Positions 14,116 through 63,489 of a stretch of 64,000 bases of DNA are shown piece after piece (within the stretch, counting starts at the first letter, position 1; every line of letters starts with the position of its first letter). This DNA is from Glaucostegus cemiculus (taxonomy: Eukaryota). A program made the translations under genes and the position numbers. The stretch spans positions 20,894,001-20,958,000 of the forward strand of contig CDPCPM010000022.1 of assembly GCA_976551045.1 (NCBI GenBank), read 5' to 3'. A model generated the notes under the pieces. It saw only the letters and a program-made list of their open reading frames with translations, was not told the DNA's origin and searched no databases.

Positions 14116-14315
14116 GCCGCCTGGTGAGCTGGTCCCAAAGGAAGAGTGGGCTGTCTCACTGGCCAGCTGCCGAAGCCACTAACGACGGTCGGCCTTGGCA
14201 TTTCCCGGGTAAGTGCATGGCAGTCGGCAGTGGCGTGCATTCATCCCCCACCTCTCGTGGTAGAAGCACCACTGCTCTGGGCCCTTGTCATTGTCCTCTG
14301 CGGGCCCCAACGATT

Positions 14316-32600: not shown

Positions 32601-35600
32601 ATTCCCGCAAACTTTAGGCCAAAGCAGATTAGCAAGAGATGTGAAGGAGACTGGTATGTGTTGTTTGCTTCTCAGTCTCAGGTTATTTTTGGAATATTTG
32701 GTGTATAGGCCCAACAATCATTAAATAATCAATAGCTTGTTGGAAAATTCTTTCAAATGTGGACAATTTAATCTATTGTTATTGTCCATTGAATAAACTT
32801 TGGTTAATATTTGCATAACAATCCAAAGACGCAGCAATAGCACAAGGCAATCAAGAATCTAGGTCATTGGGATCAGCGCTTCCTGTAAGTTCTAGAGGCT
32901 AGGATTCAGAAGGAGTGCAGAAACCAGAGAAGGATGGGACTCATCAGGAAAGGAGTGTGGATAATTGCTCATAAAATGAGGCTTGCAGTTGGTTTTACAT
33001 ATGAGCAAATTTTATTCATGTACTTCTGGATCTATTCTATAGGCAGTCCCTTAGGGTTGAGGAGAATATTCTTCTGCTCCAGTTCTGTAGGTTGTGATGT
33101 TTCTCTTGAGTCCATGTGGGACATGTAGAGTCTTGCACAGTAGAGCAAACCTGATTGACAGGGTGCTAGATATTCAAGGTGCAACATTTCTTACAACCTT
33201 ACCAACCAGTTTCCTTCTGGTTCTAATGAAGAGTCACAATTCTTACAAACTCTATGGATGTTCCTCAGTACCACCATTTTTGGTGTTCAGGGGGAGAAAG
33301 TTTATGAGGAAAATTCATTTTGTCAAAACAAGTTTCAAGAATATCCATGATTTGTTTTCCCTTTGCTCCATATAACGCTGCTGTGAAAGAGCCTAGAGTC
33401 GAGAACCCATTTTAAATTCTTGTCTTGGGCATGCGGACAATGTGACCAATTCTTTGCAGCTAGATCACTATGAGTAGAGTGTTTTAGGGAAATTGGTCTG
33501 GGAGAGATATTGATGTTGGTTCCCTTATCATGACTTGGAGGATATGGCAGAGCTAACATTGGTAGTATCTCTCCAGTACTTTGAGGTGTCCATCCCCAGT
33601 CTCCTTCCCGATCCACTCCATGCAGATAGTTTCGCATTGACTTGCCCCTTCTCAGTGTTCGGCAGTTATTTCCGTCTTCCTAATTCTTCCATTCCCCAAC
33701 CACTAATCCTGATCTGTCTACTCCTTCACCCCTATTCCCCCCATGAATTTGGAAACCTGTAACCCATCATGCAGTTGGTTTACAAACACATGCTCAAAAC
33801 AGCCGTGCCAGATCATAGATGTTCTACTGATTGGAATAGTGGCCAACTTTGAGCCAAGTTGACAGCTTGTTTTAGATCCTGTTATTATAGGGATGGAGTA
33901 GCCAGATCCATGGTGATGGTTGACTGTGAGTGAAGTGTCGACGCTGTGGAATTTCGGAGAGTGATTGATGTTGTTTTATGGGCGCTGCTACTTAATTTGG
34001 TGGGTTTTGCGAGTAATCAGTGCACTGTACGAAGGTGCACATTGTGGCATTACCAGTCTCAAATAAATAAATGGGAGTGTAATGAATGATAAGCCCTGGC
34101 ACATTAAATGTCACTCAATCCAAAACCAGAGGCCTGAAGTTTCTGGGCAAGTCATCTCTCTGTTCGTACCTCTGACTTATTCCAGCAACCTTTGGGCCAA
34201 ATCAGATTTTCAAGAGATGTGAATGAGACTGTAATGTGTTTGATTGCTTCTCAGTCTCAGGTTATTTTTGGAATATTTGGTGTATAGGCCCAACAATTAT
34301 TAAGTAATGAATAGCTTGTTGGAATATTCTTCCAAATGTAGACAATTTTGAACTATTGTTATTATCCATTGAATAAAGCTTGGTTAATATTTTCACAGGA
34401 TTCCAATGACACAGCAATAGCACAAGGAATTGAAGAATGTAATTCTTTGGGCTCAGTGCATTCCAAAGGTTCTGGAGGCGAGGGTTTGGGTGAACTGCAG
34501 GAAACAGAGAGAAATGGGAGACCTCAGGTAAGGAAGGCGAAAAATGGCTCATAAAATGAGGCTTGTAGTTGGTTATGCAGATGAGGAATTTTCATACATG
34601 TACATCTTGATCTTCTTTTCCTAGGCAGTCCATTAGGGTTGAGGAGAACATTCCTCTGCTCCAGTTCTGTAGGTTGTGAGGTGTCCCTCGTGGGACATGT
34701 AGAGCCTTGCACAGAAGAGCAAACATGATTGGCAGTGGGGTCAATATTCAAGGCGCTGCATTTCTTCCAATGTTACCAATCAGCTTCCTTCTAGTTCTGG
34801 TGAAGATACAGTACTCTTACAACCTCTATGGATGTTCCTTAGTACCACCATTTTTGGTGTTCAAGGGGTGAGAGAACATGAGGATAATTCATTTACTCAA
34901 AACAAATTTTGAGATGATCCATGAGATCGATTCCCTTTGCTCCAGTTAGTGCTGCTGTGAAGGAGCCTGGTGTCAAGGACCCATTTTAGAGTCTTGTGCA
35001 GGGCATGCGGACAATTTGACAAGCTCTTTGCAGCCAGCTTTCCTTCATTTGAGACTTTTGGGAAAATTGTCCAGGGAGAGATGTTGATGTTGGTTTCCTT
35101 ATCATGATTTGGAGGATATGGCAGAGCTGACATTTGGTAGTTTCTATCCAATGCTGTGCAATGTCTAGCCGCACTATCCTCTCCGATCCACTGCATGCAG
35201 ATAGTTCCGCATTGACTTGCCCCTTCTCAGTGTTCCACACTTGTTTCTTTATTCTTTCGTTCCCCAACCACTTTTCCTGGTCCCTCTACTCCTTCAACCC
35301 TACTTCCCTCATGAATTTGGAAGCCTGTGGCCCATCATGCAGTTGGTTCACAAACACATGATCAAAATTAGTCGTGCCTGATCATAGATGTTCTACTGAT
35401 TGGAATAGTGGCCAACTTTGAGCCGAGTTGACAGCTGGTTTTGGATCCTGTTGTTATAGGGATGGTTTTGCGTGATCCTTGGTGATGGCCGACTGTGAGT
35501 GAAGGGTCGAAACTGTGGAATCTGTTAGAGTGATTGATGTTGTTTTATGGGTGCTGCTACTTAATTTGGTGGGTTTTGCGAGTTATCACTGCACTGTATG

Positions 35601-38600
35601 AAGGTGCAGATTGTGGCATTACCAGTCTCAAATAAATGAATGCGAGTTTAATGAATGATAAACACTGACACATTAAATGTCACTCAATCCAAAACCAGAG
35701 GCCTCAAGTTACTGGGCAAGTCATCTCTCTGTTCGAATCTCTGACTTATTCCAGCAACCTTTGGACCAAAGCAGATTTTCAAGAGATGTGAATGAGACTG
35801 TAATGTGTTTGATTGCTTCTCAGTCTCAGGTTATTTGTGGAATATTTGGTGAATAGGCCCAACAATTATCAAGTAAAGAATAGGTTGTTGGAATATTCTT
35901 CCAAATGTAGACAATTTTGAACTATTGTTATTATCCATTGATTAAAGCTTGGTTAATATTTTCACAGGATTCCAATGACACAGCATTAACACAAGGAAAT
36001 GAAAAATGTAATTCTTTGGGCTCAGTGCATTCCAAAGGTCCTGGAGGCGAGGATTTGGGTGAAGTGCAGGAATCAGATAGAAATGGGAGACATCAGGTAA
36101 GGAGTGCGAATAGTGGCTCATAAAATGAGGCTTGCAGTTGGTTATGCAGATGAGCAATTTTCACACATGTACTTCTTGATCTTCTTTTCCTAGGCAGTCC
36201 ATTAGGGTTGAGGAGAACTTTCCTCTGCTTCAGTTCTGTAGGTTGTGAGGTGTCTCTTGTGGGACATGTAGAGCCTTGCACAGTAGAGCAAACATGATAG
36301 GCAGTGGGGTCAATATTCAAGGCGCAGCATTTCTTCCTATGTTACCAATCAGCTTCCTTCTGGTTCTGGTGAAGACACAGAACTCTTACAATGTCTGTGG
36401 ATATTCCTTAGTACCACCATTTTTGGTGTTCATGGGGTGAGAGTACATGAGGATAATTCATTTACTCAAAACAATTTTTGAGATGATCCATGCGATGTTT
36501 TCCCTTTGCTCCAGATAATGGTGCTGTGAAGGAGCCCGGTGTCGAGGACCCATTTTAGAGTCTTGTGTAGGGCAACGGACAATTTGACAAGCTCTTTGCA
36601 GCCAGCTCACCTTCATTTGAGACTTTTGGAAAATTGTCCTGGCAGAGATGTTGATGTTGATTCCCTTATCATGATTTGGAGGATATGGCAGAGCTAACAT
36701 TTGGTAGTATCTCTCCAGTGCTGTGAAGTGTCAATCCGCAGTATCCTCTCCGATCGACTGAATGCAGATTGTTCTGCATTGATTTGCCCCTTCTCAGTGT
36801 TCTGCAGTTGTTTCTTTATTCTTTCATTCCCCAACCACTTTTCCTGGTCCCTCTACTCCTTCAACCCAACTCCCCCCATAAATTTGGAAGCCTGTGCCCA
36901 TAATGCAGTTGGTTCACGAACACATGATCAAAATTAGTCGTGCCTGATCATAGATGATCTACTGATTGGAATAGTGGCCAACTTTGAGCCGAGTTGACAG
37001 CTTGTTTTGGATCCTGTTGTTATAGGGATGGTTTCGCGTGATCCTTGGTGATGGTCGACTGTGAGTGAAGGGTCGAAACTGTGGAATCTGTTAGAGTGAT
37101 TGATGTTGTTTTATGGGTGCTGCTACTTAATTTGGTGGGTTTTGCGAGTTATCACTGCACTGTATGAAGGTGCACATTGTGGCATTACCAGTCTCAAATA
37201 AATGATTGCGAGTTTAATGAATGATAAACACTGACACATTAAATGTCACTCAATCCAAAACCAGAGGCCTCAAGTTACTCGGCAAGTCATCTCTCTGTTC
37301 GTACCTCTGACTTATTCCAGCAACCTTTGGACCAAAGCAGATTTTCAAGAGATGTGAATGAGACTGTAATGTGTTTGATTGCTTCTCAGTCTCCGGTTAT
37401 TTGTGGAATATTTGGTGAATAGGCCCAACAATTATTAAGTAAAGAATAGGTTGTTGGAATATTCTTCCAAATGTAGACAATTTTGAACTATTGTTATTAT
37501 CCATTGATTAAAGCTTGGTTATTATTTTCACAGGATTCCAATGACACAGCATTAACACAAGGAAATGAAAAATGCTCAGTGCATTCCAAAGGTCCTGGAG
37601 GCGAGGATTTGGGTGAAGTGCAGGAATCAGATAGAAATGGGAGACATCAGGTAAGGAGTGCGAATAATGGCTCATAAAATGAGGCTTGCAGTTGGTTATG
37701 CAGATGAGCAATTTTCATACATGTACTTCTTGATCTTCTTTTCCAAGGCAGTCCATTAGGGTTGAGGAGAACTTTCCTTTGCTCCAGTTCTGTAGGTTGT
37801 GAGGTGTCTCTTGTGGGACATGTAGAGCCTTGCACCGTAGAGCAAACATGATAGGCAGTGGGGTCAATATTCAAGGCGCAGCACTTCTTCCTATGTTACC
37901 AATCAGCTTCCTTCTAGTTCTGGTGAAGACACAGAACTCTTACAACCTCTGTGGATGTTCCTTAGTACCACCATTTTTGGTGTTCATGGGGTGAGAGTAC
38001 ATGAGGATAATTCATTTACTCAGAACAATTTTTGAGATGATCCATGCGATGTTTTCCCTTTGCTCCAGGTAATGCTGCTGTGAAGGAGCCCGGTGTCGAG
38101 AACCCATTTTAGAGTCTTGTGCAGGGCATGCGGACAATTTGACAAGCTCTTTTCAGCCAGCTCACCTTCATTTGAGACTTTTGGGAAAATTGTCCTAGGA
38201 GAGATGTTGATGTTGGTTCCCTTATCATGATTTGGAGGATATGGCAGAGCTAACATTTGGTAGTATCTATCCAGTGCTGTGAAGTGTTTATCCTCAGTAT
38301 CCTCTCCGATCCACTCCATGCAGATAGTTCCGCATTGACTTGCCCCTTCTCAGTGTTCTGCAGTTGTTTCTTTATTCTTTCATTCCCCAACCACTTTTCC
38401 TGGTCCCTCTACTCCTTCAACCCTATTCCCCCCATGAATTTGGAAGCCTGTGGCCCATAATGCAGTTGGTTCACGAACACATGATCAAAATTAGTCGTGC
38501 CTGATCATAGATGATCTACTGATTGGAATAGTGGCCAACTTTGAGCCGAGTTGACAGCTTGTTTTGGATCCTGTTGTTATAGGGATGGTTTCACGTGATC

Positions 38601-41600
38601 CTTGGTGATGGCCGACTGTGAGTGAAGGGTCGAAACTGTGGAATCTGTTAGAGTGATTGATGTTGTTTTATGGGTGCTGCTACTTAATTTGGTGGGTTTT
38701 GCGAGTTATCACTGCACTGTATGAAGGTGCAGATTGTGGCATTACCAGTCTCAAATAAATGAATGCGAGTTTAATGAATGATAAACACTGACACATTAAA
38801 TGTCACTCAATCCAAAACCAGAGGCCTCAAGTTACTGGGCAAGTCATCTCTCTGTTCGAATCTCTGACTTATTCCAGCAACCTTTGGACCAAAGCAGATT
38901 TTCAAGAGATGTGAATGAGACTGTAATGTGTTTGATTGCTTCTCAGTCTCAGGTTATTTGTGGAATATTTGGTGTATAGGCCCAACAATTATTAAGTAAA
39001 GAATAGGTTGTTGGAATATTCTTCCAAATGTAGACAATTTTGAACTATTGTTATTATCCATTGATTAAAGCTTGGTTAATATTTTCACAGGATTCCAATG
39101 ACACAGCATTAACACAAGGAAATGAAAAATGTAATTCTTTGGGCTCAGTGCATTCCAAAGGTCCTGGAGGCGAGGATTTGGGTGAAGTGCAGGAATCAGA
39201 TAGAAATGGGAGACATCAGGTAAGGAGTGCGAATAATGGCTCATAAAATGAGGCTTGCAGTTGGTTATGCAGATGAGCAATTTTCATACATGTACTTCTT
39301 GATCTTCTCTTCCAAGGCAGTCCATTAGGGTTGAGGAGAACTTTCCTCTGCTCTAGTTCTGTAGGTTGTGAGGTGTCTCTTGTGGGACATGTAGAGCCTT
39401 GCACCGTAGAGCAAACATGATAGGCAGTGGGGTCAATATTCAAGGCGCAGCACTTCTTCCTATGTTACCAATCAGCTTCCTTCTAGTTCTGGTGAAGACA
39501 CAGAACTCTTACAACCTCTGTGGATGTTCCTTAGTACCACCATTTTTGGTGTTCATGGGGTGAGAGTACATGAGGATAATTCATTTACTCAAAACAATTT
39601 TTGAGATGATCCATGCGATGTTTTCCCTTTGCTCCAGATAATGGTGCTGTGAAGGAGCCCGGTGTCGAGGACCCATTTTAGAGTCTTGTGTAGGGCAACG
39701 GACAATTTGACAAGCTCTTTGCAGCCAGCTCACCTTCATTTGAGACTTTTGGAAAATTGTCCTGGCAGAGATGTTGATGTTGATTCCCTTATCATGATTT
39801 GGAGGATATGGCAGAGCTAACATTTGGTAGTATCTCTCCAGTGCTGTGAAGTGTCAATCCGCAGTATCCTCTCCGTTCCACTGAATGCAGATTGTTCTGC
39901 ATTGATTTGCCCCTTCTCAGTGTTCTGCAGTTGTTTCTTTATTCTTTCATTCCCCAACCACTTTTCCTGGTCCCTCTACTCCTTCAACCCTATTCCCCCC
40001 ATGAATTTGGAAGCCTGTGGCCCATAATGCAGTTGGTTCACGAACACATGATCAAAATTAGTCGTGCCTGATCATAAATGATCTACTGATTGGAATAGTG
40101 GCCAACTTTGAGCCGAGTTGACAGCTTGTTTTGGATCCTGTTGTTATAGGGATGGTTTTGCCTGATCCTTGGTGATGGCGAAGGGTGATGGCGAAGGGTC
40201 GAAACTGTGGAATCTGGGAGAGTGATTGATGTTGTTTTATGGGTGCTGCTACTTAATTTGGTGGGTTTTGCGAGTTATCACTGCACTGTACGAAGGTGCA
40301 CATTGTGGCATTACCAGTCTCAAATAAATGAATGGGAGTGTAATGAATGATAAGCCCTGGCACATTAAATGTCACTCAATCCAAAACCAGAGGCCTGAAG
40401 TTTCTGGGCAAGTCATCTCTCTGTTCGTACCTCTGACTTATTCCAGCAACTTTTGGGCCAAATCAGATTTTCAAGAGATGTGAATGAGACTGTCATGTGT
40501 TTGATTGCTTCTCAGTCTCAGGTTATTTTTGGAATATTTGGTGTATAGGCCCAACAATTATTAAGTAATGAATAGCTTGTTGGAATATTCTTCCAAATGT
40601 AGACAATTTTGAACTATTGTTATTATCTATTGAATAAAGCTTGGTTAATATTTTCACAGGATTCCAATGACACAGCAATAGCACAAGGAATTGAAGAATG
40701 TAATTCTTTGGGCTCAGTGCATTCCAAAGGTTCTGGAGGCGAGGGTTTGGGTGAACTGCAGGAAACAGAGAGAAATGGGAGACCTCAGGTAAGGAAGGCA
40801 AAAAATGGCTCATAAAATGAGGCTTGTAGTTGGTTATGCAGATGAGGAATTTTCATACATGTACATCTTGATCTTCTTTTCCTAGGCAGTCCATTAGGGT
40901 TGAGGAGAACTTTCCTCTGCTCCAGTTCTGTAGGTTGTGAGGTGTCCCTAGTGGGACATGTAGAGCCTTGCACAGTAGAGCAAACATGATTGGCAGTGGG
41001 GTCAATATTCAAGGCGCAGCATTTCTTCCTATGTTACCAATCAGCTTCCTTCTGGTTCTGGTGAAGACACAGAACTCTTACAATGTCTGTGGATATTCCT
41101 TAGTACCACCATTTTTGGTGTTCATGGGGTGAGAGTACATGAGGATAATTCATTTACTCAAAACAATTTTTGAGATGATCCATGCGATGTTTTCCCTTTG
41201 CTCCAGATAATGGTGCTGTGAAGGAGCCCGGTGTCGAGGACCCATTTTAGAGTCTTGTGTAGGGCAACGGACAATTTGACAAGCTCTTTGCAGCCAGCTC
41301 ACCTTCATTTGAGACTTTTGGAAAATTGTCCTGGCAGAGATGTTGATGTTGATTCCCTTATCATGATTTGGAGGATATGGCAGAGCTAACATTTGGTAGT
41401 ATCTCTCCAGTGCTGTGAAGTGTCAATCCGCAGTATCCTCTCCGATCGACTGAATGCAGATTGTTCTGCATTGATTTGCCCCTTCTCAGTGTTCTGCAGT
41501 TGTTTCTTTATTCTTTCATTCCCCAACCACTTTTCCTGGTCCCTCTACTCCTTCAACCCAACTCCCCCCATAAATTTGGAAGCCTGTGCCCATAATGCAG

Positions 41601-53600: not shown

Positions 53601-56600
53601 CAGAACTCTTACAACCTCTGTGGATGTTCCTTAGTACCACCATTTTTGGTGTTCATGGGGTGAGAGTACATGAGGATAATTCATTTACTCAAAACAATTT
53701 TTGAGATGATCCATGCGATGTTTTCCCTTTGCTCCAGATTATGGTGCTGTGAAGGAGCCCGGTGTCGAGGACCCATTTTAGAGTCTTGTGTAGGGCAACG
53801 GACAATTTGACAAGCTCTTTGCAGCCAGCTCACCTTCATTTGAGACTTTTGGAAAATTGTCCTGGCAGAGATGTTGATGTTGATTCCCTTATCATGATTT
53901 GGAGGATATGGCAGAGCTAACATTTGGTAGTATCTCTCCAGTGCTGTGAAGTGTCAATCCGCAGTATCCTCTCCGATCCACTGAATGCAGATAGTTCTGC
54001 ATTGATTTGCCCCTTCTCAGTGTTCTGCAGTTGTTTCTTTATTCTTTCATTCCCCAACCACTTTTCCTGGTCCCTCTACTCCTTCAACCCAACTCCCCCC
54101 ATAAATTTGGAAGCCTGTGCCCATAATGCAGTTATTTCACGAACACATGATAAAATTAGTCGTGCCTGATCATAGATGTTCTACTGATTGGAATAGTGGC
54201 CACCTTTGAGCCGAGTTGACAGCTGGTTTTGGATCCTGTTGTTATAGGGATGGTTTCGCGTGATCCTTGGTGATGGCCGACTGTGAGTGAAGGGTCGAAA
54301 CTGTGGAATCTGTTAGAGTGATTGATGTTGTTTTATGGGTGCTGCTACTTAATTTGGTGGGTTTTGGGAGTTAGCACTGCACTGTACTAAGGTGCACATT
54401 GTGGCATTACCAGTCTCAAATAAATGGATGCGAGTTTAATGAATGATAAACACTGACACATTAAATGTCACTCAATCCAAAACCAGAGGCCTCAAGTTAC
54501 TGGGCAAGTCATCTCTCTGTTCGTACCTCTGACTTATTCCAGCAACCTTTGGGCCAAAGCAGATTTTCAAGAGATGTGAATGAGACTGTAATGTGTTTGA
54601 TTGCTTCTCAGTCTCAGGTTATTTTTGGAATATTTGTTGTATAGGCTCAACAATTACTAAGTAATGAATAGCTTGTTGGAATATTCTTCCAAATGTAGAC
54701 AATTTTGAACTATTGTTATTATCCATTGATTAAAGCTTGGTTAATATTTTCACAGGATTCCAATGACACAGTATTAGCACAAGGAATTGAAAAATGTAAT
54801 TCTTTGGGCTCAGTGCATTCCAAAGGTTCTGGAGGCGAGGGTTTGGGTGAACTGCAGGAAACAGCGAGAAGTGGGAGACCTCAGGTAAGGAGTGCGAAAA
54901 ATGGCTCATAAAATGAGGCTTACAGTTGGTTATGCAGATGAGGAATTTTCATACATTTACATCTTGATCTTCTTTTCCTAGGCAGTCCATTAGGGTTGAG
55001 GAGAACTTTCCTCTGCTCCAGTTCTGTAGGTTGTGAGGTGTCCCTAGTGGGACATGTAGAGCCTTGCACAGTACAGCAAACATGATTGGCAGTGGGGTCA
55101 ATATTCAAGGCGCTGCATTTCTTCCAATGTTACCAATCAGCTTCCTTCTTGTTCTGGTGAAGATACAGAACTCTTACAACCTCTATTGATGTTCCTTAGT
55201 ACCACCATTTTTGGTGTTCATGGGGTGAGAGAACATGAGGATAATTCATTTACTCAAAACAAATTTTGAGATGATCCATGAGATCGTTTTCCCTTTGCTC
55301 CAGATAATGCTGCTGTGAAGGAGCCCGGTGTCAAGGTCCCATTTTAGAGTCTTGTGTAGGGCATGCGGACAATTTAACAAGCTCTTTGCAGCCAGCTTTC
55401 CTTCATTTGGGACTTTTGGGAAAATTGTCCAGGGAGAGATGTTGATGTTGGTTTCCTTATCATGATTTGGAGGATATGGCAGAGCTAACATTTGGTAGTA
55501 TCTCTCCAGTGCTGTGAAGTGTTTATCCCCTGTCTCCTCTCCGATCCACTGAATGCAGATAGTTCCGCATTGACTTGCCCCTTCTCAGTGTTCAGCAGTT
55601 GTTTCTTTATTCTTTCATTCCCCAACCACTTTTCCTGGTCCCTCTACTCCTTCAACCCTACTCCCCCCATAAATTTGGAAGCCTTTGGCCCATCATGCAG
55701 TTGGTTCACAAACACATGTTCAAAATTAGTCGTCGCCCGATCATAGATGTTCTACTGATTGGAATAGTGGCCAACTTTGAGCCGAGTTGACAGCTTGTTC
55801 TGGATCCTGTTGTTATAGGGATGGTTTAGCCTGATCCTTGGTGACGGCCGACTGTGAGTGAAGGGTCGAAACTGTGGAATCTGTTAGAGTGACTGATGTT
55901 GTTTTATGGGTGCTGCTACTTAATTAGGTTGGTTTTGGAAGTTATCACTGCACTGTAGTAAGGTGCACATTGTGGCATTACCAGACTCAAATAAATGAAT
56001 GCTAGTTTAATGAATGATAAACCCTGGCACATTAAAATTCATGCAGTCCAAAACCAGAGGCCTCAAGTTACTGGGCAAGTCATCTCTCTGTTCGTTCCTC
56101 CGACTTTTTCCAGCAACCGTCGGGCCAAAGCAGATTTTCAAGAGATGTGAATGAGACTGTAATGATTTTGTTTGCTTCTCAGTTTCAGGTTATTTGTGGA
56201 ATATTTGGTGAATAGGCCCAACAATTATTAAGTAAAGAATAGGTTGTTGGAATACTCTTCCAAATGTAGACAATTTTGAACTATTGTTATTATCCATTGA
56301 TTAAAGCTTGGTTAATATTTTCACAGGATTCCAATGACACAGCATTAACACAAGGAAATGAAAAATGTAATTCTTTGGGCTCAGTGCATTCCAAAGGTCC
56401 TGGAGGCGAGGATTTGGGTGAAGTGCAGGAATCAGATAGAAATGGGAGACCTCAGGTAAGGAGTGCGAATAATGGCTCATAAAATGAGGCTTGCAGTTGG
56501 TTATGCAGATGAGGAATTTTCATACATGTACATCTTGATCTTCTCTTCCTAGGCAGTCCATTAGGGTTGAGGAGAACTTTCCTCTACTCCAGTTCTGTAG

Positions 56601-59600
56601 GTTGTGAGGTGTCTCTTGTGGGACATGTAGAGCCTTGCACCGTAGAGCAAACATGATAGGCAGTGGGGTCAATATTCAAGGCGCAGCATTTCTTCCTATG
56701 GTACCAATCAGCTTCTTTCTAGTTCTGGTGAAGACACAGAACTCTTACAACCTCTAAGGACGTTCCTTAGTACCACCATTTTTAGTGTTCATGGGGTGAG
56801 AGTACATGAGGATAATTCATTTACTCAGAACAATTTTTGAGATGATCCATGCGATGTTTTCCCTTTGCTCCAGATAATGCTGCTGTGAAGGAGCCCGGTG
56901 TCAAGGACCCATTTTAGAGTCTTGTGTAGGGCATGCGGACAATTTGACAAGCTCTTTGCAGCTGGCTAACCTTCATTTGAGACTTTTGGGAAAATTGTCC
57001 AGGGAAAGATGTTGATGTTGGTTCCCTTATCATGATTTGGAGGATATGGCAGAGCGAACATTTGGTAGTATCTACCCAGTGCTGTGAAGTGTTTATCCCC
57101 TGTCTCCTCTCCGATCCACTCCATGAAGATAGTTCCTCATTGACTTGCCCCTTCTCAGTGTTCCGCAGTTGTTTCTTTATTCTTTCATTCCCCAACCACT
57201 TTTCCTGGTCCCTCTACTCCTTCAACCCTACTCCCGCTGTTAATTTGGAAGCCTGTGGCCCAACATGCAGTTGATTCACAAACAAATGATCAAAATTAGT
57301 CGTGCCTGATCATCGATGTTCTACTGATTGGAATAGTGGCCAACTTTGAGCCGAGTTGACAGCTTGTTTAAGATCCTGTTGTAATAGGGATGGTTTCGCG
57401 TGATCCTTGGTGATGGCCGACTGTGAGTGAAGGGTCGAAACTGTGGAATCTGTTAGAGTGATTGATGTTGTTTTATGGGTGCTGCTACTTAATTTGGTGG
57501 GTTTTGCGAGTTATCACTGCACTGTACGAAGGTGCAGATTGTGGCATTATCAGTCTCAAATAAATGAATGGGAGTTTAATGAATGATAAACCCTGGCACA
57601 TTAAATGTCACTCATTCCAAAACCAGAGGCCTCAAGTTACTGGGCAAGTCATCTCTCTCTTCGTACCTCCGACTTATTCCAGCAACCTTTGGACCAAAGC
57701 AGATTTTCAAGAGATGTGAATGAGACTGTAATGTGTTTGATTGCTTCTCAGTCTCAGGTTATTTGTGGAATATTTGGTGTATAGGCCCAACAATTATTAA
57801 GTAATGAATAGCTTGTTGGAATAGATTAACGGTTGTTTTAATGAATGATAAATTCTGGCACATTAAATGTCACTTAAACTGAAACCAGAGCCCTCAAGTT
57901 GCTGGGCATGTCATCTTTCTGTTCGTACCTCAGTCTGATTTCCACAACCTTTGGGCCAAAGCAGATTTGCAAGAGATGTCAATGAGACTGTAATGTGTTT
58001 GTTTACTTGTTTGGTTATTGTGGAATATTTGGTGTATAGGCCCAACAATCATTGAATAATGAATAGCTTCTTTGAAAATTCTTTCAAATGTGAAGAATTT
58101 AAACTGTTTTTATTATCAATTGAATAAACCTTTGTTAATATTTGCGTAGCAATCCAAAGACAGAGCAATGGCACAAGCAAATCAGGAATCTAGGTCATTG
58201 GGATCAGCGGTTTTTGGAAGTTCTAGAGGCCAGGATTCACAAGAAGTGCAGAAATCAGAAGGGGATGTGATTCATCAGGTAAGGAGTACGAATTATTGCT
58301 CATAAAATGAGGCTTGCAGTTGGTTATGCAGATGAGCAAATTTTATTCATGTACTTCCCGATCTATTCTTCCTAGGCAGTCCTTTAGGGTTGTGGAGAAT
58401 ATTTTTCTGCCCCAGTTCTATAGGCTGTGATGTTTCTCTTGAGTCCATGTGGGACATGTAGCGTCTTGCACAGTAGAGCATACCTGATTGACAGGGTGCT
58501 AGATATTCAAGGTGCAACATTTCTTACAACCTTACCAACCAGTTTCCTTCTGGTTCCAATGAAGAGACACAATTCTTACAACCTCTATAGATGTTCCTCA
58601 CTATCACCATTTTTGGTGTTCATGGGGAGGAAGTTTATGAGGAAAATTCATTTTCTCAAAACAAGTTTTGAGAATATCCATGAGTTGTTTTCCCTTTGCT
58701 CCAGATAATGCTGCTGTGAAAGAGCCTAGAGTCAAGGACCCATTTTGAGGTCTTTTGTTGTGCATGTGGACAATGTGACCAGTTCTTTGCATCTAGCTCA
58801 GTATGATACGAGTGTTTTCTGGAAATTGGTCTAGGAGAGATGTTGATGTTGGTTCCCTTATCATGATTTGGAAGATATGGCAGAGCTATCATTGGTAGCA
58901 TCTCTCCATTGCTTTGAGGTGTCTATCCCCACTATTCTCCCCGATCCACTCCATGCTGATATTTCCACATTGACTTGCCCCTTCTCAGTGTTCGGCAGTT
59001 GTTTCCGCCTTCCTAATTCTTCCTTTCCCCAACCACTATTCCCTATCCGTCTACACCTTCAACCCTATTACCCCCATGATGTTGGAAGACTGTGGCCCAT
59101 CATGCAGTTGGTTTACAAACACATGATCAACAACAGCCGTGCCATATCATAGATGTTCTACTGATTGGAATAGTCGCCAACTTTGAACCAAGTTGACAGC
59201 TTGTTTTCGATCCTATTGTTATAGGGATGGTGTAGCCAGGTGCATGGTGAGAGTTGACTGCGAGTGAAGCGACGACATTCTGGAATTGGGGAGAGTGATT
59301 GATGTTGTTTTATGGGTGCTGCTAATTAATTTGGTGGGTTTTGCAAGATATTACTGCACTGTATGAAGGTGCACATTGTGGCATTACTAGTCTCAAATAA
59401 ATTAATGGGAGTTTAATGAAAGATAAATCCTGGCACATTAAATGTCACTCAAACCAAAACCAGAGCCCTCAAGTTACTGGGCAAGCAATCTCTCTGTTCG
59501 TACCTCCGACTTATTCCAGCAACCTTTGGGCCAAAGCAGATTTTCAAGAGATGTGAATGAGACTGTAATGTGTTTGATTGCTTCTCAGTCTCAGGTTATT

Positions 59601-62008
59601 TGTGGAATATTTGGTGTATAGGCCCAACAATTATTAAGTAAAGAATAGGTTGTTGGAATATTCTTCCAAATGTAGACAATTTTGAACTATTGTTATTATC
59701 CATTGAATAAAGCTTGGTTAATATTTTCACAGCATTCCAAAGACACAGCATTGGCACAAGGAATTGAAGAATGTTATTCTTTGGGCTCAGTGCATTCCAA
59801 AGGTTCTGGAGGCAAGGATTTGGGTGAAGTGCAGGAAACAGAGAGAAATGGGAGACATCAGGTAAGGAGTGCGAATAATGGCTCATAAAATGAGGCTTGC
59901 ATTTGGTTATGCAGATGAGGAATTTTCATACATGTACATCTTGATCTTCTCTTCCTAGGCAGTCCATTAGGGTTGAGGAGAACTTTCCTCTTCTCTAGTT
60001 CTGTAGGTTGTGAGGTGTCTCTTGTGGGACATGTAGAGCCTTGCACAGTAGAGGAAACATGATTGGCAGTGGGGTCAATATTCAAGGCGCTGCATTTCTT
60101 CCAGTGTTACCAATCAGCTTCCTTCTAGTTCTGGTGAAGACACAGAACTCTTACAACCTCTATGGATGTTCCTGAGTACCACCATTTTTGGTGTTCATGG
60201 GGTGAGAGTACATGAGGATAATTCATTTACTCAAAACAATTTTTGAGATGATCCATGAGATCTTTTCCCATTGCTCCAGATAATGCTGCTGTGAAAGAGT
60301 CCGGTGTCGAGGACCCATTTTAGAGTCTTGTGTAGGGCATGCGGACAATTTGACAAGCTCTTTGCAGCCAGCTCACCTTCATTTGTGACTTTTGGTAAAA
60401 TTGTCCTGGGAGAGATGTTGATGTTCGTTCCCTTATCATGATTTGGAGGATATGGCAGAACTAACATTGGTAGTATCTCTCCAGTGCTGGAGGTGTCTAT
60501 CCCCAGTCTCCTCTCTGATCCACTCCATGCAGATAGTTCCGCATTGACTTGCCCCTTCTCAGTGTTCCGCAGTTGTTTCTTTATTCTTTCATTCCCCAAC
60601 CACTTTTCCTGGTCCCTCTACTCCTTCAACCCTACTCCCCCCATGAATTTGGAAGCCTGTGGCCCATCATGCAGTTGGTTCACAAACACATGATCAAAAT
60701 TAGTCGTGCCCGATCATAGATGTTCTACTGATTGGAATAGTGGCCACCTTTGAGCCGAGTTGACAGCTTGTTTTGGATCCTGTTGTTATAGGGATGGTTT
60801 CGTATGATCCTTGGTGATGGCCGACTGTGAGTGAAGGGTCAAAACTGTGGAATCTGTTAGAGTGATTGATGTTGTTTTATGGGTGCTGCTACTTAATTTG
60901 GTGGGTTTTGCGAGTTATCACTGCACTGTATGAAGGTGCAGATTGTGGCATTACCAGTCTCAAATAAATGAATGGGAGTTTAATGAATGATAAACACTGA
61001 CACATTAAATGTCACTCATTCCAAAACCAGAGGCCTCAAGTTACTGGGCAAGTCATCTCTCTCTTCGTACCTCCGACTTATTCCAGCAACCTTTGGACCA
61101 ATGCAGATTTTCAAGAGATGTGAATGAGACTGTAATGTGTTTGATTGCTTCTCAGTCTCAGGTTATTTGTGGAATATTTGGTGTATAGGCCCAACAATCA
61201 TTAAATAATGAATACCATGTTGGAATATTCTTCCAAATGTAGACAATTTGAACTACTGAAATACTGTCTACCTTCAGTCTCTTCTCCAATCCACTCCATG
61301 CACATTGTTTCCTATTAACTTGCACTTTCTCACTGTTCCGCAGTAGTCTCTGTCTTCCTATTTTTTCCTCTTCGACACCACTGTTCCTCATCTTCCTGCT
61401 CCATCATCCCCTATTCCCAGCATGATGGTTTTTCCTTGTGGCCCATCATGCAGTTAGTCCACAAACACATGATCAACATCAGCAATTTAAGATCATGGAA
61501 GTTCTACTGATTGGAAGAGTGTCGAACTTTGAACCGAGTAGACAGTTTATTTTGGAGTTAATGAATGGTATACACTTGCACTTTAAATGTTACTCAAACC
61601 AAACCCAGAGTCCACAATTTGGTGAGCAAGACAACTGTCTATTCGTACCCTAGACTTGTTCCAGCATCATTTTGGGCCAAAGCAGATTTGCAAGAGATGT
61701 CAATGAGACTGCAATGTGTTTATTTGCTTTTCAGTCTCACGTAATTTTTGGAATGTTTGGTGTTTGGGCCCAACAATCATTGAACAATGAATCACTTGGT
61801 AGAATATTCTTCCAACAAGTTTGACAATTAAAAATATTGTTATTATCCATTGAACAAGCCCTGGCTAATATTTTCATAGGAATCCAAAGACAGAGCAATG
61901 GCACATAGAAATCGACAATCTTGTTCATTAGAATCAAAGTTTGCTGTAGTATCTAGAAGCCATAAATTGGATGAAAGGCAGAATGCACAGAGGGATGGGA
62001 ATTGTCAA
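17621..62008 (+). CDS. Multi-exon ubiquitin-specific protease (peptidase C19, USP47/USP40/USP7-like), 3'-incomplete; model includes the tandem 129-nt exons
   Basis: Manual assembly of GT-AG exons with matching phases. GIHNQGATCYLNTLLQTLYM Cys box, QQDAAEYF, CLEC/CETC Zn ribbon, LPQILVLQLKRFEFDY. No His box was found in the window. Linkage of the repeat exons to this gene is inferred. Confidence 0.75.
19735..20372 (+). mobile_element. Penelope-like element 3' fragment (intronic)
   Basis: HVACHFNSPSHSHTDLSV.GLLH...EEEHLMFHLGSLQP GIY-YIG C-terminus plus pyrimidine-rich tail. Confidence 0.75.
21644..21740 (+). CDS. USP Cys-box exon (KFAGIHNQGATCYLNTLLQTLYMSPEVKDAIKR)
   Basis: Canonical USP Cys box; catalytic Cys codon TGC at 21676-21678; AG|gtttgt donor, phase 2. 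Confidence 0.92.
21922..22064 (+). CDS. USP exon (LYINPIQSKENFNKDTSIGHQLKELFEMLDAKEPGNTQRITKTLGIN)
   Basis: cctcctcttag| acceptor, G|gtaagt donor, phases 2/1 match neighbours; resembles the USP47-type SI..QL..LF...T..IT..G segment. Confidence 0.88.
23342..23433 (+). CDS. USP QQD-box exon (VRKQQDAAEYFRKIINKLAEESDGETCNISQ)
   Basis: QQDAxE motif; ctttaag| acceptor, CAG|gttagt donor, phases 1/0. Confidence 0.9.
24378..24509 (+). CDS. USP exon with the first Zn-ribbon CxxC (IYQSKAINSLTCLECNVEAPEECCLLDIPLTVHLNDCGSSIQSV)
   Basis: ttttcccccag| acceptor, GTG|gtaagt donor, 132 nt, phase 0/0. Confidence 0.9.
25030..25125 (+). CDS. USP exon with the second Zn-ribbon CxxC (NAALQDFLKAVILDGDNLCYCETCQKKTKTEM)
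   Basis: tttgttttcag| acceptor, ATG|gtgagt donor; LDGDN.CYCETC motif. Confidence 0.9.
25300..25990 (-). mobile_element. Degraded RTE-like LINE 3' end (intronic)
   Basis: Minus-strand remnants CPICGKVC ... GLI of a C-terminal Zn-finger-like motif and PALLYSSET, typical of RTE ORFs. Confidence 0.45.
26808..26945 (+). CDS. USP box-4 exon (RYYFERLPQILVLQLKRFEFDYSMMTFKKLHDEVEIPLSLKFQKKQ)
   Basis: LP..L.LQLKRF motif; tttacag| acceptor, CAG|gtatat donor, phase 0/0. Confidence 0.9.
28435..28476 (+). CDS. Small USP exon (NKKNGKTEWCLNSM)
   Basis: ttttattcacag| acceptor, ATG|gtaaga donor, 42 nt, open, phase 0/0. No motif support. Confidence 0.6.
29985..30838 (+). mobile_element. Penelope-like element 3' fragment with GIY-YIG endonuclease remnant
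   Basis: ORF 30040-30351: FTSESDDVIYCIRC...ETQRRLGDRFIEH...HFN...H...LEEHLIFRLGSLQPEGLN. Confidence 0.85.
32819..32947 (+). pseudogene. Dead copy of the repeat exon
   Basis: Acceptor AG>AA, donor GT>GA, in-frame TAG at 32900-32902. Confidence 0.8.
34399..34527 (+). CDS. Repeat exon 1, type A (DSNDTAIAQGIEECNSLGSVHSKGSGGEGLGELQETERNGRPQ)
   Basis: ttttcacag| ... CAG|gtaagg, 129 nt, open, phase 0/0. Confidence 0.8.
35968..36096 (+). CDS. Repeat exon 2, type B (DSNDTALTQGNEKCNSLGSVHSKGPGGEDLGEVQESDRNGRHQ)
   Basis: Same splice sites, 129 nt, open. Confidence 0.8.
37534..37650 (+). CDS. Repeat exon 3, type B with in-frame 12-nt deletion
   Basis: 117 nt, lacks NSLG, splice sites intact. Confidence 0.78.
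39091..39219 (+). CDS. Repeat exon 4, type B
   Basis: 129 nt, open, splice sites intact. Confidence 0.8.
40660..40788 (+). CDS. Repeat exon 5, type A
   Basis: 129 nt, open, splice sites intact. Confidence 0.8.
42226..42342 (+). CDS. Repeat exon 6, type B with in-frame 12-nt deletion
   Basis: 117 nt, splice sites intact. Confidence 0.78.
43783..43911 (+). CDS. Repeat exon 7, type B
   Basis: 129 nt, open, splice sites intact. Confidence 0.8.
45352..45480 (+). CDS. Repeat exon 8, type A
   Basis: 129 nt, open, splice sites intact. Confidence 0.8.
46917..47045 (+). CDS. Repeat exon 9, type B
   Basis: 129 nt, open, splice sites intact. Confidence 0.8.
48486..48614 (+). CDS. Repeat exon 10, type B (G18C)
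   Basis: 129 nt, open, splice sites intact. Confidence 0.8.
50054..50182 (+). CDS. Repeat exon 11, type A variant (E28K, E37S)
   Basis: 129 nt, open, splice sites intact. Confidence 0.8.
51622..51750 (+). CDS. Repeat exon 12, type A variant (G27V, E28K)
   Basis: 129 nt, open, splice sites intact. Confidence 0.8.
53191..53319 (+). CDS. Repeat exon 13, type B (D37G)
   Basis: 129 nt, open, splice sites intact. Confidence 0.8.
54756..54884 (+). CDS. Repeat exon 14, A/B mosaic (DSNDTVLAQGIEKC...QETARSGRPQ)
   Basis: 129 nt, open, splice sites intact. Confidence 0.8.
56327..56455 (+). CDS. Repeat exon 15, type B with a type A 3' end (RPQ)
   Basis: 129 nt, open, splice sites intact. Confidence 0.8.
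58150..58278 (+). CDS. Repeat exon 16, diverged type C (QSKDRAMAQANQESRSLGSAVFGSSRGQDSQEVQKSEGDVIHQ)
   Basis: tttgcgtag| ... CAG|gtaagg, exactly 129 nt and open despite divergence. Confidence 0.75.
59733..59861 (+). CDS. Repeat exon 17 (HSKDTALAQGIEECYSLGSVHSKGSGGKDLGEVQETERNGRHQ)
   Basis: 129 nt, open, splice sites intact. Confidence 0.8.
61880..62008 (+). CDS. Repeat exon 18, highly diverged type D (ESKDRAMAHRNRQSCSLESKFAVVSRSHKLDERQNAQRDGNCQ)
   Basis: ttttcatag| ... CAA|gtaagg, exactly 129 nt and open, although the flanking intron is heavily diverged. Confidence 0.75.
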
Positions 62009-63157
62009 GTAAGGAATGCTGATCATGGCTCACAAAATAACGCTTACAGTTGGTCTTGCAGATGAGGAAATTTAATACATGTACTTCTTGACCTTCTCTT
62101 CATAGGCACACCCTTCAGGTTGAGAACTTTCTTCTGCTCCAGTTTTGTAGGTTAAAATGTATTTGATGAGGTCCATGTGGGAGAGGTAGAGTCATTCATA
62201 GTGGAGCAGATGTTGATTAATAGTGGGGTTGATAATTCAAGGCGCTGCACTCCTTTCAACATTTCCAGTCAGCTTCCCTTTGCTCTTGATGAAGAGACTC
62301 AGTTCTCACTGGCTCTATGGATGGTCCTCTCCAGTGCTTTGAGGTGTCTCTCTCCAGCCTCCTCCCTGATCCTCTCCATTCACAATGCTCCATTTGACCT
62401 GGACCTTCTCAGTGTTCCCCAATAGTCTCCATCTTCCTATTTTTTCCTTTCCCCACCACTGTTCCGGATCTCCCTGCTCCTTCATCCTCTATTCCCCACA
62501 CGATGGTTAAAACTTGTGGCCCACCATGCAGTGTGTTCACAAACACATGATCAACATCAGGCCTGCCAGATCATAGATGTGGTACTGATTAGAAGAGTGG
62601 TGAACTTTGAACTGAGAAGAGGCCCTGTTTTGGAGACTGTTGTTATGTAGATGGTGTTGCCAAATCCTTGCTGATTGCTGAGTGTGATTGAAGCCTCAAT
62701 ACTGGGGAACTTGGGAGAGCAGCTGATGATGTTTTACTTGTCCTGCTAATTGATTTGGTGGGTTGCAGACTTATCACTGCACTGTAAGAGTGGACATTGT
62801 GTCATCTCTAGTCTCAAATAAATTAAAGGAAAGCTTTCTGCATGGTAAACTGCTGCACATTAAAGGTGTCTCAAACCAAAATCAGAGCCCACAATTTGCT
62901 GGGCAAGACATCTCTTCTCTTTGCTCCTCAGACTTTTTCCAGCACCTTTGGGCCAGAGCAGATTTGCCAGAGAAGTTCATGAGACTGCAATTTGATAAAG
63001 TGCTTTTCAGCTTGGCTAATGTCCAGAAATGTTTGGTGTTTTGGCCTTTAGCAAATGTTGCCATGCAATTATGAAGAATGTGGTGGAATATTCTTGGTGG
63101 ACATCATAAGATATTGTTTGTATCCAGTGAACGGACTTTAGTTGAAAATTTTCATAG

Positions 63158-63284
63158 GAATCCAAAGAAACAGCAAAGACATGTAGGAAGCAATGATCTT
63201 TTTCATCTGGACCAGAACTTTCCGTAAGATCTACAAGGTACAAAATTAAAGAAACCAGAAACCACAGAGGGATGGGAGTCCGAG
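63158..63284 (+). pseudogene. Dead copy of the repeat exon
   Basis: Acceptor retained, but TGA at 63194-63196, small deletions, and donor decayed to gttccc. Confidence 0.65.
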
Positions 63285-63489
63285 GTTCCCATCTAGAGAC
63301 CTGAATGGAAGGTGTGGCGCTCAAAATTCAAATTTCACTCCAATAGCCGGGAAAGTTAAAGTTACAAAACTAAATAATGACCTGGAACAAAAAGCTGGAG
63401 ACCCTGAAACTGCCGGATTGCCGCAAAAGAAAAAATCTACCTTGCTAAAGGCTTTTTGCCAAATCTGGCCATCTTTGCCTGTTTTCATA

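What the first reader, a model, noticed from the sequence alone, without database searches (positions are those of the whole stretch)
34399..62008. The 1.57-kb 'satellite' is a tandem array of coding exons: 18 in-frame 43-aa cassettes apparently inside a deubiquitinase catalytic domain
Seen: 18 units contain an acceptor (core copies ttttcacag), a 129-nt open frame (117 nt in two copies) and a |gtaagg donor, all phase 0/0. The only exonic indel in intact copies is 12 nt (in frame), whereas the surrounding unit sequence carries 1-2 nt indels. Two strongly diverged copies (58150, 61880) keep exactly 43 codons and both splice sites. The USP exons upstream on the same strand (26808-26945, 28435-28476) also end in phase 0. 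Established: USP domains tolerate insertions between the LKRF box (box 4) and the His box (box 5), and USP47 has one there. Inference: this gene carries up to 766 aa of G/S/E/Q-rich, probably disordered repeats at that site. Because the exons are symmetric, any subset could be spliced in frame, giving a length- and sequence-variable DUB. I know of no USP with such an exon array.
Basis: partly seen in the sequence, partly recalled or inferred. Interest (0 to 1): 0.92.

Follow-up and report, generated by a model that had tools for sequence, protein, structure and literature searches.

The report
Eighteen tandem cassette exons in a deubiquitinase
A shark-or-ray gene for a ubiquitin-removing enzyme carries 18 tandem copies of a small coding exon that relatives have in one to five copies, which could put a floppy loop of up to 766 amino acids inside the enzyme's catalytic domain.

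Summary
Eighteen units of a 1.57-kb tandem array each hold AG | 129-nt open frame | GTAAGG; two copies are 117 nt. All are phase 0/0 and sit downstream of seven intact USP exons on the + strand.

A profile of the 18 peptides, run against 1.84 billion proteins, found only two relevant hits. Both are sawfish 'USP47-like' proteins with the same 43-aa cassette at the same site, between ...NGKTEWCLNSM and the His-box strand. Gene models there carry 4, 3, 2 or 1 cassettes, a houndshark gene carries 5 to 2, and skate contigs of 1.8-2.4 kb carry two.

The cassette is therefore an old coding exon of this gene family. What is new is the scale: 18 intact copies plus two decayed flanking ones, against at most five in the 31 relatives I read.

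An AlphaFold2 model of the closest relative folds as a USP domain, with the cassettes as a low-confidence loop. Within the array there is no purifying selection on sequence (dN/dS ≥ 1), only modest evidence that the frame is preserved.

No RNA run was listed, so how many copies are spliced in is unknown. The His-box exon lies outside the window.

The parts
21644..21740 (+). USP exon with the Cys box (FAGIHNQGATCYLNTLLQTLYMSPEVKDAIK-)
   Evidence: Pfam UCH E 3.3e-07. Cys-box motif. AG/GT borders read. Colinear with P0007 and P0001.
21922..22064 (+). USP exon (…PIQSKENFNKDTSIGHQLKELFEMLDAKEPGNTQRITKTLGIN)
   Evidence: tblastn 72% to P0007. Borders read.
23342..23433 (+). USP exon with the QQD box (RKQQDAAEYFRKIINKLAEESDGETCNISQ)
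   Evidence: Ends in phase 0.
24378..24509 (+). USP exon (IYQSKAINSLTCLECNVEAPEECCLLDIPLTVHLNDCGSSIQSV), first zinc-ribbon CxxC
   Evidence: tblastn 85% to P0007. Borders read. Phase 0/0.
25030..25125 (+). USP exon (NAALQDFLKAVILDGDNLCYCETCQKKTKTEM), second CxxC
   Evidence: Phase 0/0.
26808..26945 (+). USP exon with the LKRF box (box 4)
   Evidence: Pfam UCH E 6.7e-08. 93% identical to P0007. Phase 0/0.
28435..28476 (+). 14-codon exon NKKNGKTEWCLNSM, the last fold element before the cassettes
   Evidence: The homologous residues form strand 247-251 in the model of P0007.
31387..63285 (+). Whole tandem array of ~1.57-kb exon-plus-intron units: 20 units, the outer two decayed
   Evidence: blastn of one unit against the window. 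Identity matrix.
32819..32947 (+). Decayed cassette copy: acceptor AA, in-frame stop, donor GA
   Evidence: 85% identical to the 58150 copy.
34399..34527 (+). Cassette 1 (type A, ...RNGRPQ)
35968..36096 (+). Cassette 2 (type B, ...RNGRHQ)
37534..37650 (+). Cassette 3 (type B with a 12-nt in-frame deletion, 39 aa)
39091..39219 (+). Cassette 4 (type B)
40660..40788 (+). Cassette 5 (type A)
42226..42342 (+). Cassette 6 (39 aa). Same deletion as cassette 3, copied with the three-unit block.
43783..43911 (+). Cassette 7 (type B)
45352..45480 (+). Cassette 8 (type A)
46917..47045 (+). Cassette 9 (type B)
48486..48614 (+). Cassette 10 (type B, G18C)
50054..50182 (+). Cassette 11 (type A variant)
51622..51750 (+). 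Cassette 12 (type A variant)
53191..53319 (+). Cassette 13 (type B variant)
54756..54884 (+). Cassette 14 (A/B mosaic)
56327..56455 (+). Cassette 15 (type B, ends RPQ)
58150..58278 (+). Cassette 16, an old diverged type (QSKDRAMAQANQESRSLGS...), 69% nt identity to the core consensus
59733..59861 (+). Cassette 17 (HSKDTALAQGIEECYSLGS...)
61880..62008 (+). Cassette 18, an old type (ESKDRAMAHRNRQSCSLES...). 68% aa identity to the first cassette of sawfish P0007 and 64-68% to those of paralogue P0004.
63157..63285 (+). Decayed cassette copy with several stops

Best explanation
The array is part of a 'USP47-like' deubiquitinase gene of a cartilaginous fish close to sawfishes.

This gene family carries an old phase-0/phase-0 cassette exon of about 43 codons. 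In the protein it lies between the short strand after the LKRF box (...TEWCLNSM) and the strand that leads into the catalytic His box. It encodes a polar, acidic, unstructured loop at a site where USP domains commonly tolerate insertions.

In this genome the 1.57-kb unit, made of the exon plus its intron, has been multiplied by unequal recombination to 18 intact copies. The multiplication includes a very recent copy of a three-unit block. One decayed copy sits at each end of the array.

Every copy keeps strong AG and GTAAGG sites and is symmetric. Any number of copies can therefore be spliced in without breaking the frame, and the enzyme could carry a loop of 0 to 766 residues.

Shown here: the exons, their sites and frames; their homology to coding cassettes at the same site in relatives; the USP fold and the low-confidence loop in the closest relative.

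Inferred: that the copies are actually included in this species' mRNA, how many are included, that the 3' half of the gene is intact, and any function of loop length.
For: Array anatomy.

Upstream USP exons are intact, with canonical sites and continuous phases. Pfam UCH matches the Cys-box and LKRF exons.

The cassette profile hits only sawfish USP47-like proteins, at E 2e-23 and 3e-22 among 1.84e9 proteins. The cassettes sit at the identical position. The window is colinear with P0007, at 72-93% HSP identity for the six exons from 21922 onwards.

Isoform series differ by exactly one cassette. Pristis proteins are 689, 646, 646, 603 and 560 aa. Mustelus proteins are 802, 763, 724 and 685 aa.

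In the skate cluster, eight Logan contigs of 1.8-2.4 kb encode 585-593-aa proteins. The two I read (P0009, P0197) carry two cassettes. An uninterrupted ORF of that length on a contig that short means spliced RNA (the RNA origin is my inference).

AlphaFold2 model of P0007: pLDDT is 75-95 over most of the core and below 50 for cassette residues 255-332, which are flanked by strands 247-251 and 336-351. The fold's best match is the USP47 catalytic domain, E 3.8e-25. The USP47 sequence has its own insert at the same site.

Frame preservation: 0 indel runs in 129 exon columns against 21 in 824 flanking columns across six diverged copies, so about 3.3 were expected and P is about 0.04. The two old intact copies keep their ORF and both splice sites. 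A crude neutral simulation gives 0.14-0.18 for the ORF and 0.37-0.47 for the sites, per copy. The two outermost copies lost all three features.
Against: No RNA run of this organism was listed, so no junction was seen.

The His-box and Asp-box exons are not in the window.

Among the 14 core units, exon diversity (0.0485) equals intron diversity (0.0434). Of 22 variable exon sites, 20 change the amino acid. Type A versus type B shows 10 nonsynonymous and 0 synonymous differences. The young copies therefore show no purifying selection, and their open frames follow from their youth.

The relatives' isoforms are automatic XP_ gene models that I could not check against reads.

The most conserved cassette motif (SLG) is deleted in two copies. 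The basic K-R-x-R cluster of other species' cassettes is absent from the core copies.
Confidence: 0.8

Rival explanations
1. The cassette is a true exon of the family, but most of the 16 young core copies are passengers of a neutral intronic amplification and are usually skipped. The mature protein then carries only a few cassettes, as in relatives.
For: Core copies evolve like their introns, and dN/dS is not below 1. None of the 31 family proteins I read has more than five cassettes. Symmetric exons can be skipped without cost. Isoform models with fewer cassettes exist in sawfish and Mustelus.
Against: All 16 core copies keep identical strong acceptor and donor sequences, so the splicing machinery has no evident way to tell them apart. 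Not one of the 18 has a stop or a frameshift, although the expected number is small. Only 22 of 387 possible single changes create a stop.
Confidence: 0.3
2. In this species the gene is a decaying pseudogene, and the array expanded because nothing constrains it.
For: The 3' catalytic exons are unseen. The flanking cassette copies are decayed. There is no purifying selection on the core cassettes.
Against: All seven upstream exons are open with canonical splice sites and correct phases, and the LKRF exon is 93% identical to the sawfish protein. All 18 cassettes are open with intact sites.
Confidence: 0.07
3. It is a non-coding satellite in an intron, and its open frame and splice-like sites are chance.
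For: Open frames of 40 codons or more are common in the unit (15 of them), and the opposite strand is also open over the exon.
Against: The same 43-aa sequence is annotated coding sequence at the same position in sawfish proteins, E 2e-23. It lies in contigs that must be spliced RNA in a skate relative.
Confidence: 0.02

Closest known systems
Pristis pectinata 'ubiquitin carboxyl-terminal hydrolase 47-like' genes (XP_051874057/-059/-060/-061/-064/-065, XP_051874681, XP_051874683/-685)
   Same: Same gene family and exon order. The same 43-aa phase-0 cassette sits between ...NGKTEWCLNSM and the His-box strand. The cassettes are tandemly repeated and are included in varying numbers in the gene models. 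The terminal peptide of isoform X9 matches an intronic segment about 225 nt upstream of each cassette in the window, so the intron part of the unit is shared as well.
   Different: The sawfish proteins have one to four cassettes against 18 intact here. They are automatic annotations. I found no paper describing the cassettes.
USP47 (catalytic domain structures 8itn / 8itp)
   Same: Closest solved sequence (E 5e-39) and closest fold (E 3.8e-25). It also has an insertion between the LKRF box and the His box (alignment).
   Different: The USP47 insert aligned shows no cassette repeats. From recall, it is not built of repeated exons. True USP47 proteins are about 1300-1400 aa with C-terminal USP47 domains (PF19718 and PF25985), which this family lacks.
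USP18 and the fish 'USP47-like = USP18-like' clade
   Same: USP18 is the next-best solved relative (E 1e-27). A salmon paper places sequences annotated USP47-like as sister to USP18 and reports that the salmon member is induced by virus and interferon-gamma (PMC12234341, passages read). USP47 and USP18 are described as ohnologues (PMC5381560, passages read).
   Different: I did not test whether the shark and ray family belongs to that clade. The paper's tree is in a supplement I could not open. No cassette repeats are mentioned in the passages I read.
LPA kringle-IV type 2 coding VNTR
   Same: A multi-kilobase tandem unit made of exon plus intron, repeated many times inside one gene, so that copy number sets protein length. 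The abstract in the listing (PMC11462820) gives 5.6 kb per unit and 1-40 units per allele.
   Different: From recall, the LPA unit holds two exons encoding a folded kringle domain of a secreted protein. Here the unit holds one exon encoding a disordered segment inside an enzyme's catalytic domain. Copy-number polymorphism was not tested here.
Insertion points of USP catalytic domains (Ye, Scheel, Hofmann, Komander 2009)
   Same: The cassette site corresponds to the gap between the LKRF box and the His box, one of the common insertion points.
   Different: I saw only the reference to that paper, in PMC12440824. The box numbering, and examples such as the USP25/28 insertion, are recalled and were not read. 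Those inserts are single domains or loops, not exon arrays.

Membership tests
USP (peptidase C19) catalytic domain | Cys box with the catalytic cysteine (G-x-x-N-x-G-N/A-T-C-Y) | tested here: met
   GIHNQGATCYLNTLLQTLYM at 21652. Pfam PF00443 E 3.3e-07, above the cut-off.
USP (peptidase C19) catalytic domain | QQD box, zinc-ribbon CxxC pairs and LKRF box in order on one strand | tested here: met
   The LKRF exon matches PF00443 at E 6.7e-08.
USP (peptidase C19) catalytic domain | His box (G-H-Y) and Asp/Asn box | not testable with these tools
   Not in the window. There is no motif hit and no tblastn hit to residues beyond the cassettes of P0007, P0001 or P0004. Both boxes are present in all relatives read.
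Chondrichthyan 'USP47-like' subfamily with a cassette exon | Colinear exon series with high identity to named members | tested here: met
   Seven exons match P0007. HSP identity is 72-93% for the six exons from 21922 onwards; the Cys-box HSP scores 58% because it runs on into the intron.
Chondrichthyan 'USP47-like' subfamily with a cassette exon | Cassette(s) between the ...TEW... strand and the Y-x-L-F-A-I-C-x-H-x-G strand | tested here: met
   The profile hits P0001 and P0002. The insert was extracted from 26 of the 29 proteins scanned; the search motifs were not found in the other three. The downstream border in the window is unseen.
Coding tandem exon array (LPA KIV-2 kind) | Tandem units that each hold a complete exon with its own splice sites, in frame with its neighbours | tested here: met
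   18 of 18 copies have AG / open frame / GT at phase 0/0.
Coding tandem exon array (LPA KIV-2 kind) | Repeated exons present in mature mRNA | not testable with these tools
   No RNA run was listed for this sequence. The only support comes from relatives.
Coding tandem exon array (LPA KIV-2 kind) | Copy number varies between individuals | not tested
   There is only an indirect hint: a three-unit block copy that is 99.6% identical.
True USP47 | C-terminal USP47 domains (PF19718 / PF25985) and a length of about 1300-1400 aa | tested here: not met
   The family members closest to the window list only PF00443 and PF13423 and are 419-813 aa, whereas true USP47 proteins list PF19718 and PF25985. 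The window's own C-terminus is unseen.

The most novel reading that the evidence does not exclude
The cassette array may be a fast-evolving, copy-number-variable and combinatorially spliced hypervariable loop in an interferon-linked, USP18-like deubiquitinase or deISGylase. It would be kept diverse by selection, for example as an interface or decoy in a host-pathogen conflict.

Three observations point that way. dN/dS is 1.0-1.9 between old copy types, and type A versus type B shows 10 nonsynonymous and 0 synonymous changes. Length is strictly conserved. Cassettes have been duplicated in several shark and ray lineages.

One gene could then produce a population of enzymes that differ in loop length and sequence.
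Probability: 0.12. Interest if true: 0.8.

Novelty: new variant of a known kind. Interest (0 to 1): 0.58.

Why it matters
Enzyme catalytic domains rarely tolerate hundreds of residues of repeat. Here a deubiquitinase would carry a loop two to three times the size of the roughly 300-residue structured part of its USP fold. The loop's length is set by a recombination-prone exon array and possibly by splicing.

The family shows the same site expanding in several shark and ray lineages, to one to five copies, and to 18 here. This gives a natural series for asking what loop length at this USP insertion point does to activity, localisation or partner binding.

It is also a clean non-mammalian example of a kilobase-unit coding tandem repeat. 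Short-read assemblies and automatic annotation tend to collapse or truncate loci of this kind.

Tried and rejected

Earlier findings. The search of earlier findings was not open at three tries.

Tandem Repeats Finder misses the array because its longest period is 500. Rfam found nothing in the window. Pfam finds nothing in the cassettes themselves.

Purifying selection within the array was sought and not found.

Faster divergence of the exon than of its flanks looked strong in pairwise alignments of 300-nt flanks. It shrank in a multiple alignment of 400-nt flanks: P 0.018 and 0.035 in two pairs, none in the other four. I do not rely on it.

Longer annotated family members were sought with P0025 as query, which admits candidates up to 1841 aa. 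The two long close relatives I read (P0025 1052 aa, P0110 1106 aa) owe their length to C-terminal repeats, not to cassettes. P0111 and P0114, both over 1200 aa, were not read.

I considered that the terminal exon of sawfish isoform X9 might also be usable in the window. The homologous segment exists in every unit, but it is preceded by TG, not AG.

Each exon was handled on its own, and the fold was done on the database protein P0007.

Papers. 'USP47-like' and 'USP18-like' each occur in one paper of the library, the same salmon paper. Searches gave nothing on these cassettes. The supplementary tree of PMC12234341 could not be seen and may bear on the clade assignment.
Full report
**What is in the sequence**

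GTAAGG occurs at 19 places after position 30000. At 18 of them it directly follows a stop-free frame that begins just after an AG, 129 nt upstream, or 117 nt upstream at 37534 and 42226. Sixteen acceptors read ttttcacag. The two diverged copies read tttgcgtag and ttttcatag.

The units are 1554-1571 nt apart in the core and 1823, 1583 and 2147 nt at the 3' end. Tandem Repeats Finder does not report the array, because its longest period is 500.

A blastn of one unit against the window shows that the array is longer than the finding says. A further unit at 31539-32947 holds a cassette copy at 32819-32947 that has lost its acceptor (AA), carries an in-frame stop and has lost its donor (GA). A partial unit after 62009 holds a copy near 63157-63285 with several stops. 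There are thus 20 copies in all. Eighteen are intact and the two outermost are decayed.

**How the array is built**

The core units (u2-u15) are 93-100% identical to one another. The 4,692-nt block 36097-40788 recurs at 40789-45480 with 4674 of 4692 bases identical. The two 117-nt exons are therefore one deletion event copied along with the block.

The array is a mosaic. Units 16 and 18 are about 95% identical to the core over their first ~1300 nt and then drop to 58-74% across the exon. Units 1 and 17 are diverged over their first ~1000 nt. An older set of cassette types (32819, 58150, 61880, 63157) is thus interleaved with a young amplified set.

**The surrounding gene**

On the same strand, upstream, lie seven exons of a USP catalytic domain:
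- the Cys box at 21644-21740
- 21922-22064
- the QQD box at 23342-23433
- 24378-24509
- 25030-25125
- the LKRF box at 26808-26945
- the 14-codon exon at 28435-28476

All have AG/GT borders and continuous phases. Pfam UCH matches the Cys-box exon (E 3.3e-07) and the LKRF exon (E 6.7e-08). No His box exists anywhere in the window.

**The decisive comparison**

I aligned the 18 peptides as separate rows (A1) and searched the profile against 1.84 billion representative proteins. There were three hits:
- P0001, E 2.2e-23
- P0002, E 3.4e-22
- a bacterial repeat protein at 2.9e-04, which I regard as spurious

P0001 and P0002 are 'ubiquitin carboxyl-terminal hydrolase 47-like' proteins of the sawfish Pristis pectinata (XP_051874064, XP_051874685).

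In P0001 two 43-aa cassettes lie exactly between ...DKNNGKTEWCLNSM and IYSTYNLFAICDHSGEFGFGHYVAYI. A tblastn of the sawfish proteins on the window shows all seven upstream exons in order. HSP identity to P0007 (XP_051874681) is 72-93% for the six exons from 21922 onwards; the Cys-box HSP scores 58% because it runs on into the intron. Nothing matches residues beyond the cassettes.

Cassette 61880 is 68% identical to the first cassette of P0007. It is 64-68% identical to the cassettes of the more distant paralogue P0004, whose LKRF-box exon is only 54% identical to the window's.

**The cassette across the family**

Searches with P0001 and with P0025 returned a family of shark, ray and chimaera proteins, mostly named USP47-like. 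I read 31 of them and scanned 29 for the segment between the LKRF box and the His-box strand. It was extracted from 26; the search motifs were not found in the other three.

| Cassettes | Proteins |
|---|---|
| 1 | Scyliorhinus, Cetorhinus, Mobula, Hemitrygon, Hypanus, one Mustelus gene |
| 2 | Skates, Heptranchias, Pristiophorus, sawfish P0007 and P0004 |
| up to 4 | Sawfish locus of P0001 |
| up to 5 | Mustelus asterias LOC144491367 |

The isoform models step by exactly one cassette. Sawfish X1 is 689 aa with 4 cassettes. X3 and X4/5 are both 646 aa with 3 cassettes, but different subsets. X7 is 603 aa with 2 and X8 is 560 aa with 1. Mustelus runs 802, 763, 724 and 685 aa.

These are automatic models, and I could not check them against reads.

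There is independent support that cassettes reach mRNA. The cluster containing Leucoraja erinacea XP_055502415 holds ten Logan contigs. Eight of them, 1.8-2.4 kb long, encode 585-593-aa proteins. The two that I read carry two cassettes. An uninterrupted ORF of that size on so short a contig must come from spliced RNA; that is my inference.

Eighteen intact copies is therefore far beyond anything I saw in relatives. Neither search returned a protein of the window's own species.

**Structure**

An AlphaFold2 model of P0007, built with a 30-sequence family alignment, has a confident USP core, with pLDDT 75-95 over most of it. pLDDT is below 50 for residues 255-332, which are the two cassettes.

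The residues homologous to exon 28435-28476 form strand 247-251, and the His-box exon starts strand 336-351. Foldseek's best match is the USP47 catalytic domain 8itn (E 3.8e-25), followed by USP7, USP46, USP2 and USP18.

By sequence, USP47 is also the closest solved protein (E 5.2e-39), and its alignment shows USP47's own insert at the same site. USP18 and USP7 follow at about 1e-27.

The 766 residues of the window's cassettes are 72% disorder-promoting residues, with G 15.7, S 12.3, E 10.2 and Q 7.7 %. Net charge is -57.

**What the array itself says about selection**

- Among the 14 core units, exon diversity (0.0485) equals intron diversity (0.0434).
- Among 16 copies, 20 of 22 variable exon sites change the amino acid.
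- Type A versus type B differs by 10 nonsynonymous and 0 synonymous changes. Between the old types dN/dS is 1.0-1.9.

There is thus no purifying selection on the sequence. The data fit either relaxed constraint or diversifying selection.

An apparent excess of exon divergence over flank divergence largely disappears in a multiple alignment.

Frame preservation has modest support. Across six diverged copies there are 21 distinct gap runs in 824 flanking columns and none in the 129 exon columns. About 3.3 were expected, so P is about 0.04. In the core there are nine intronic indels of 1-3 nt against one 12-nt exonic deletion.

A crude simulation gives a neutrally drifting copy a 0.14-0.18 chance of staying open at the observed divergence, and 0.37-0.47 of keeping all four splice-site bases. 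Two old copies kept everything and the two outermost lost everything.

An open 43-codon frame alone means little. One unit has 15 ORFs of 40 aa or more, and the antisense strand is also open over the exon.

**What could not be done**

No RNA run was listed for 56300-62100 (none was listed, which is not the same as none exists). Read laying was therefore not used, and no junction was seen in this species. No eukaryotic genome collection was available to fetch the sawfish locus.

**Context from papers**

USP47 and USP18 are described as diverged ohnologues (PMC5381560, passages read). A salmon study places sequences annotated USP47-like as sister to USP18, proposes the name USP18-like, and reports induction of the salmon gene by ISAV and interferon-gamma (PMC12234341, passages read). 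Its tree is in a supplement that I could not open, and I did not test whether the shark family belongs to that clade.

The paper on common insertion points in USP domains (Ye et al. 2009) I saw only as a reference, in PMC12440824. The box numbering is recalled.

I found no paper describing these cassettes. 'USP47-like' and 'USP18-like' each occur only in the salmon paper, and searches gave nothing relevant.

**Verdict**

The cassettes are real coding exons of a USP47-like gene, at a known insertion site of the USP fold.

What is new is the scale of the expansion, not the cassette itself. Whether all 18 copies are used, and to what end, is open.

Noticed in passing
window 5678-6757 (-): An intact single-exon 359-aa rhodopsin-type receptor (Pfam 7tm_1, E 4.7e-40). 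Its closest solved relative is GPR55 (E 6.7e-47), followed by GPR35 and LPA receptors 5 and 6.
   Followed up: partly
window ~11293-14894 (-): A GC-rich (52-58%) LTR-retrotransposon remnant. Its reverse-transcriptase (E 1.4e-32), RNase H, weak integrase (E 0.007, below the Pfam cut-off) and DUF7041 gag-like pieces are split over several frames.
   Followed up: partly
window 7898-8650 (+): A 250-aa ORF holding the end of a reverse-transcriptase domain plus an ALKBH8_N-type segment (E 5.6e-17). It looks like a non-LTR retroelement fragment.
   Followed up: no
window 19578-19937 (+) and 30001-30348 (+): Two similar ORF fragments (...HFNS..HSHTD.S..G.LH......H..EE.L.F.LGSLQP...) followed by proline/serine-rich open frames. 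Probably copies of one dispersed repeat. No Pfam match for the 30040-30351 copy.
   Followed up: partly
window, ~225 nt upstream of each cassette (e.g. 34175-34225, 35744-35794, 59509-59559): Every unit holds a segment translating to TYSSNLW(A/T)KADFQEM*. It matches the C-terminal peptide of sawfish isoform X9 (449 aa: four cassettes, then an alternative terminal exon and no His box). The sawfish unit therefore shares the intron too. In the window the segment is preceded by TG, not AG.
   Followed up: partly
P0004 / P0002 (Pristis pectinata paralogue, same chromosome record as P0001 and P0007): Its LKRF-box exon is only 54% identical to the window's, yet its two cassettes are 64-68% identical to cassette 61880. 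This suggests that cassettes were exchanged between neighbouring paralogues, or that these paralogues' cassettes diverged more slowly than their core.
   Followed up: no
P0021, P0022, P0110, P0025 (Stegostoma, Rhincodon, Hemiscyllium, Scyliorhinus proteins): In the two carpet-shark proteins, the same insertion site carries a long E/Q-rich coiled-coil-like stretch after one cassette. Hemiscyllium has three ~30-aa cassettes of another type. Hemiscyllium and Scyliorhinus also have large C-terminal repeats (three copies of about 190 aa in Scyliorhinus). The family appears to be generally prone to repeats.
   Followed up: no
window cassettes vs other species (A1): Cassettes of most other species keep S-L-G followed by a basic K-R-x-R cluster that looks like a nuclear-localisation signal. 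The window's core cassettes have SKGPGGED there, and the 12-nt deletion removes NSLG.
   Followed up: no
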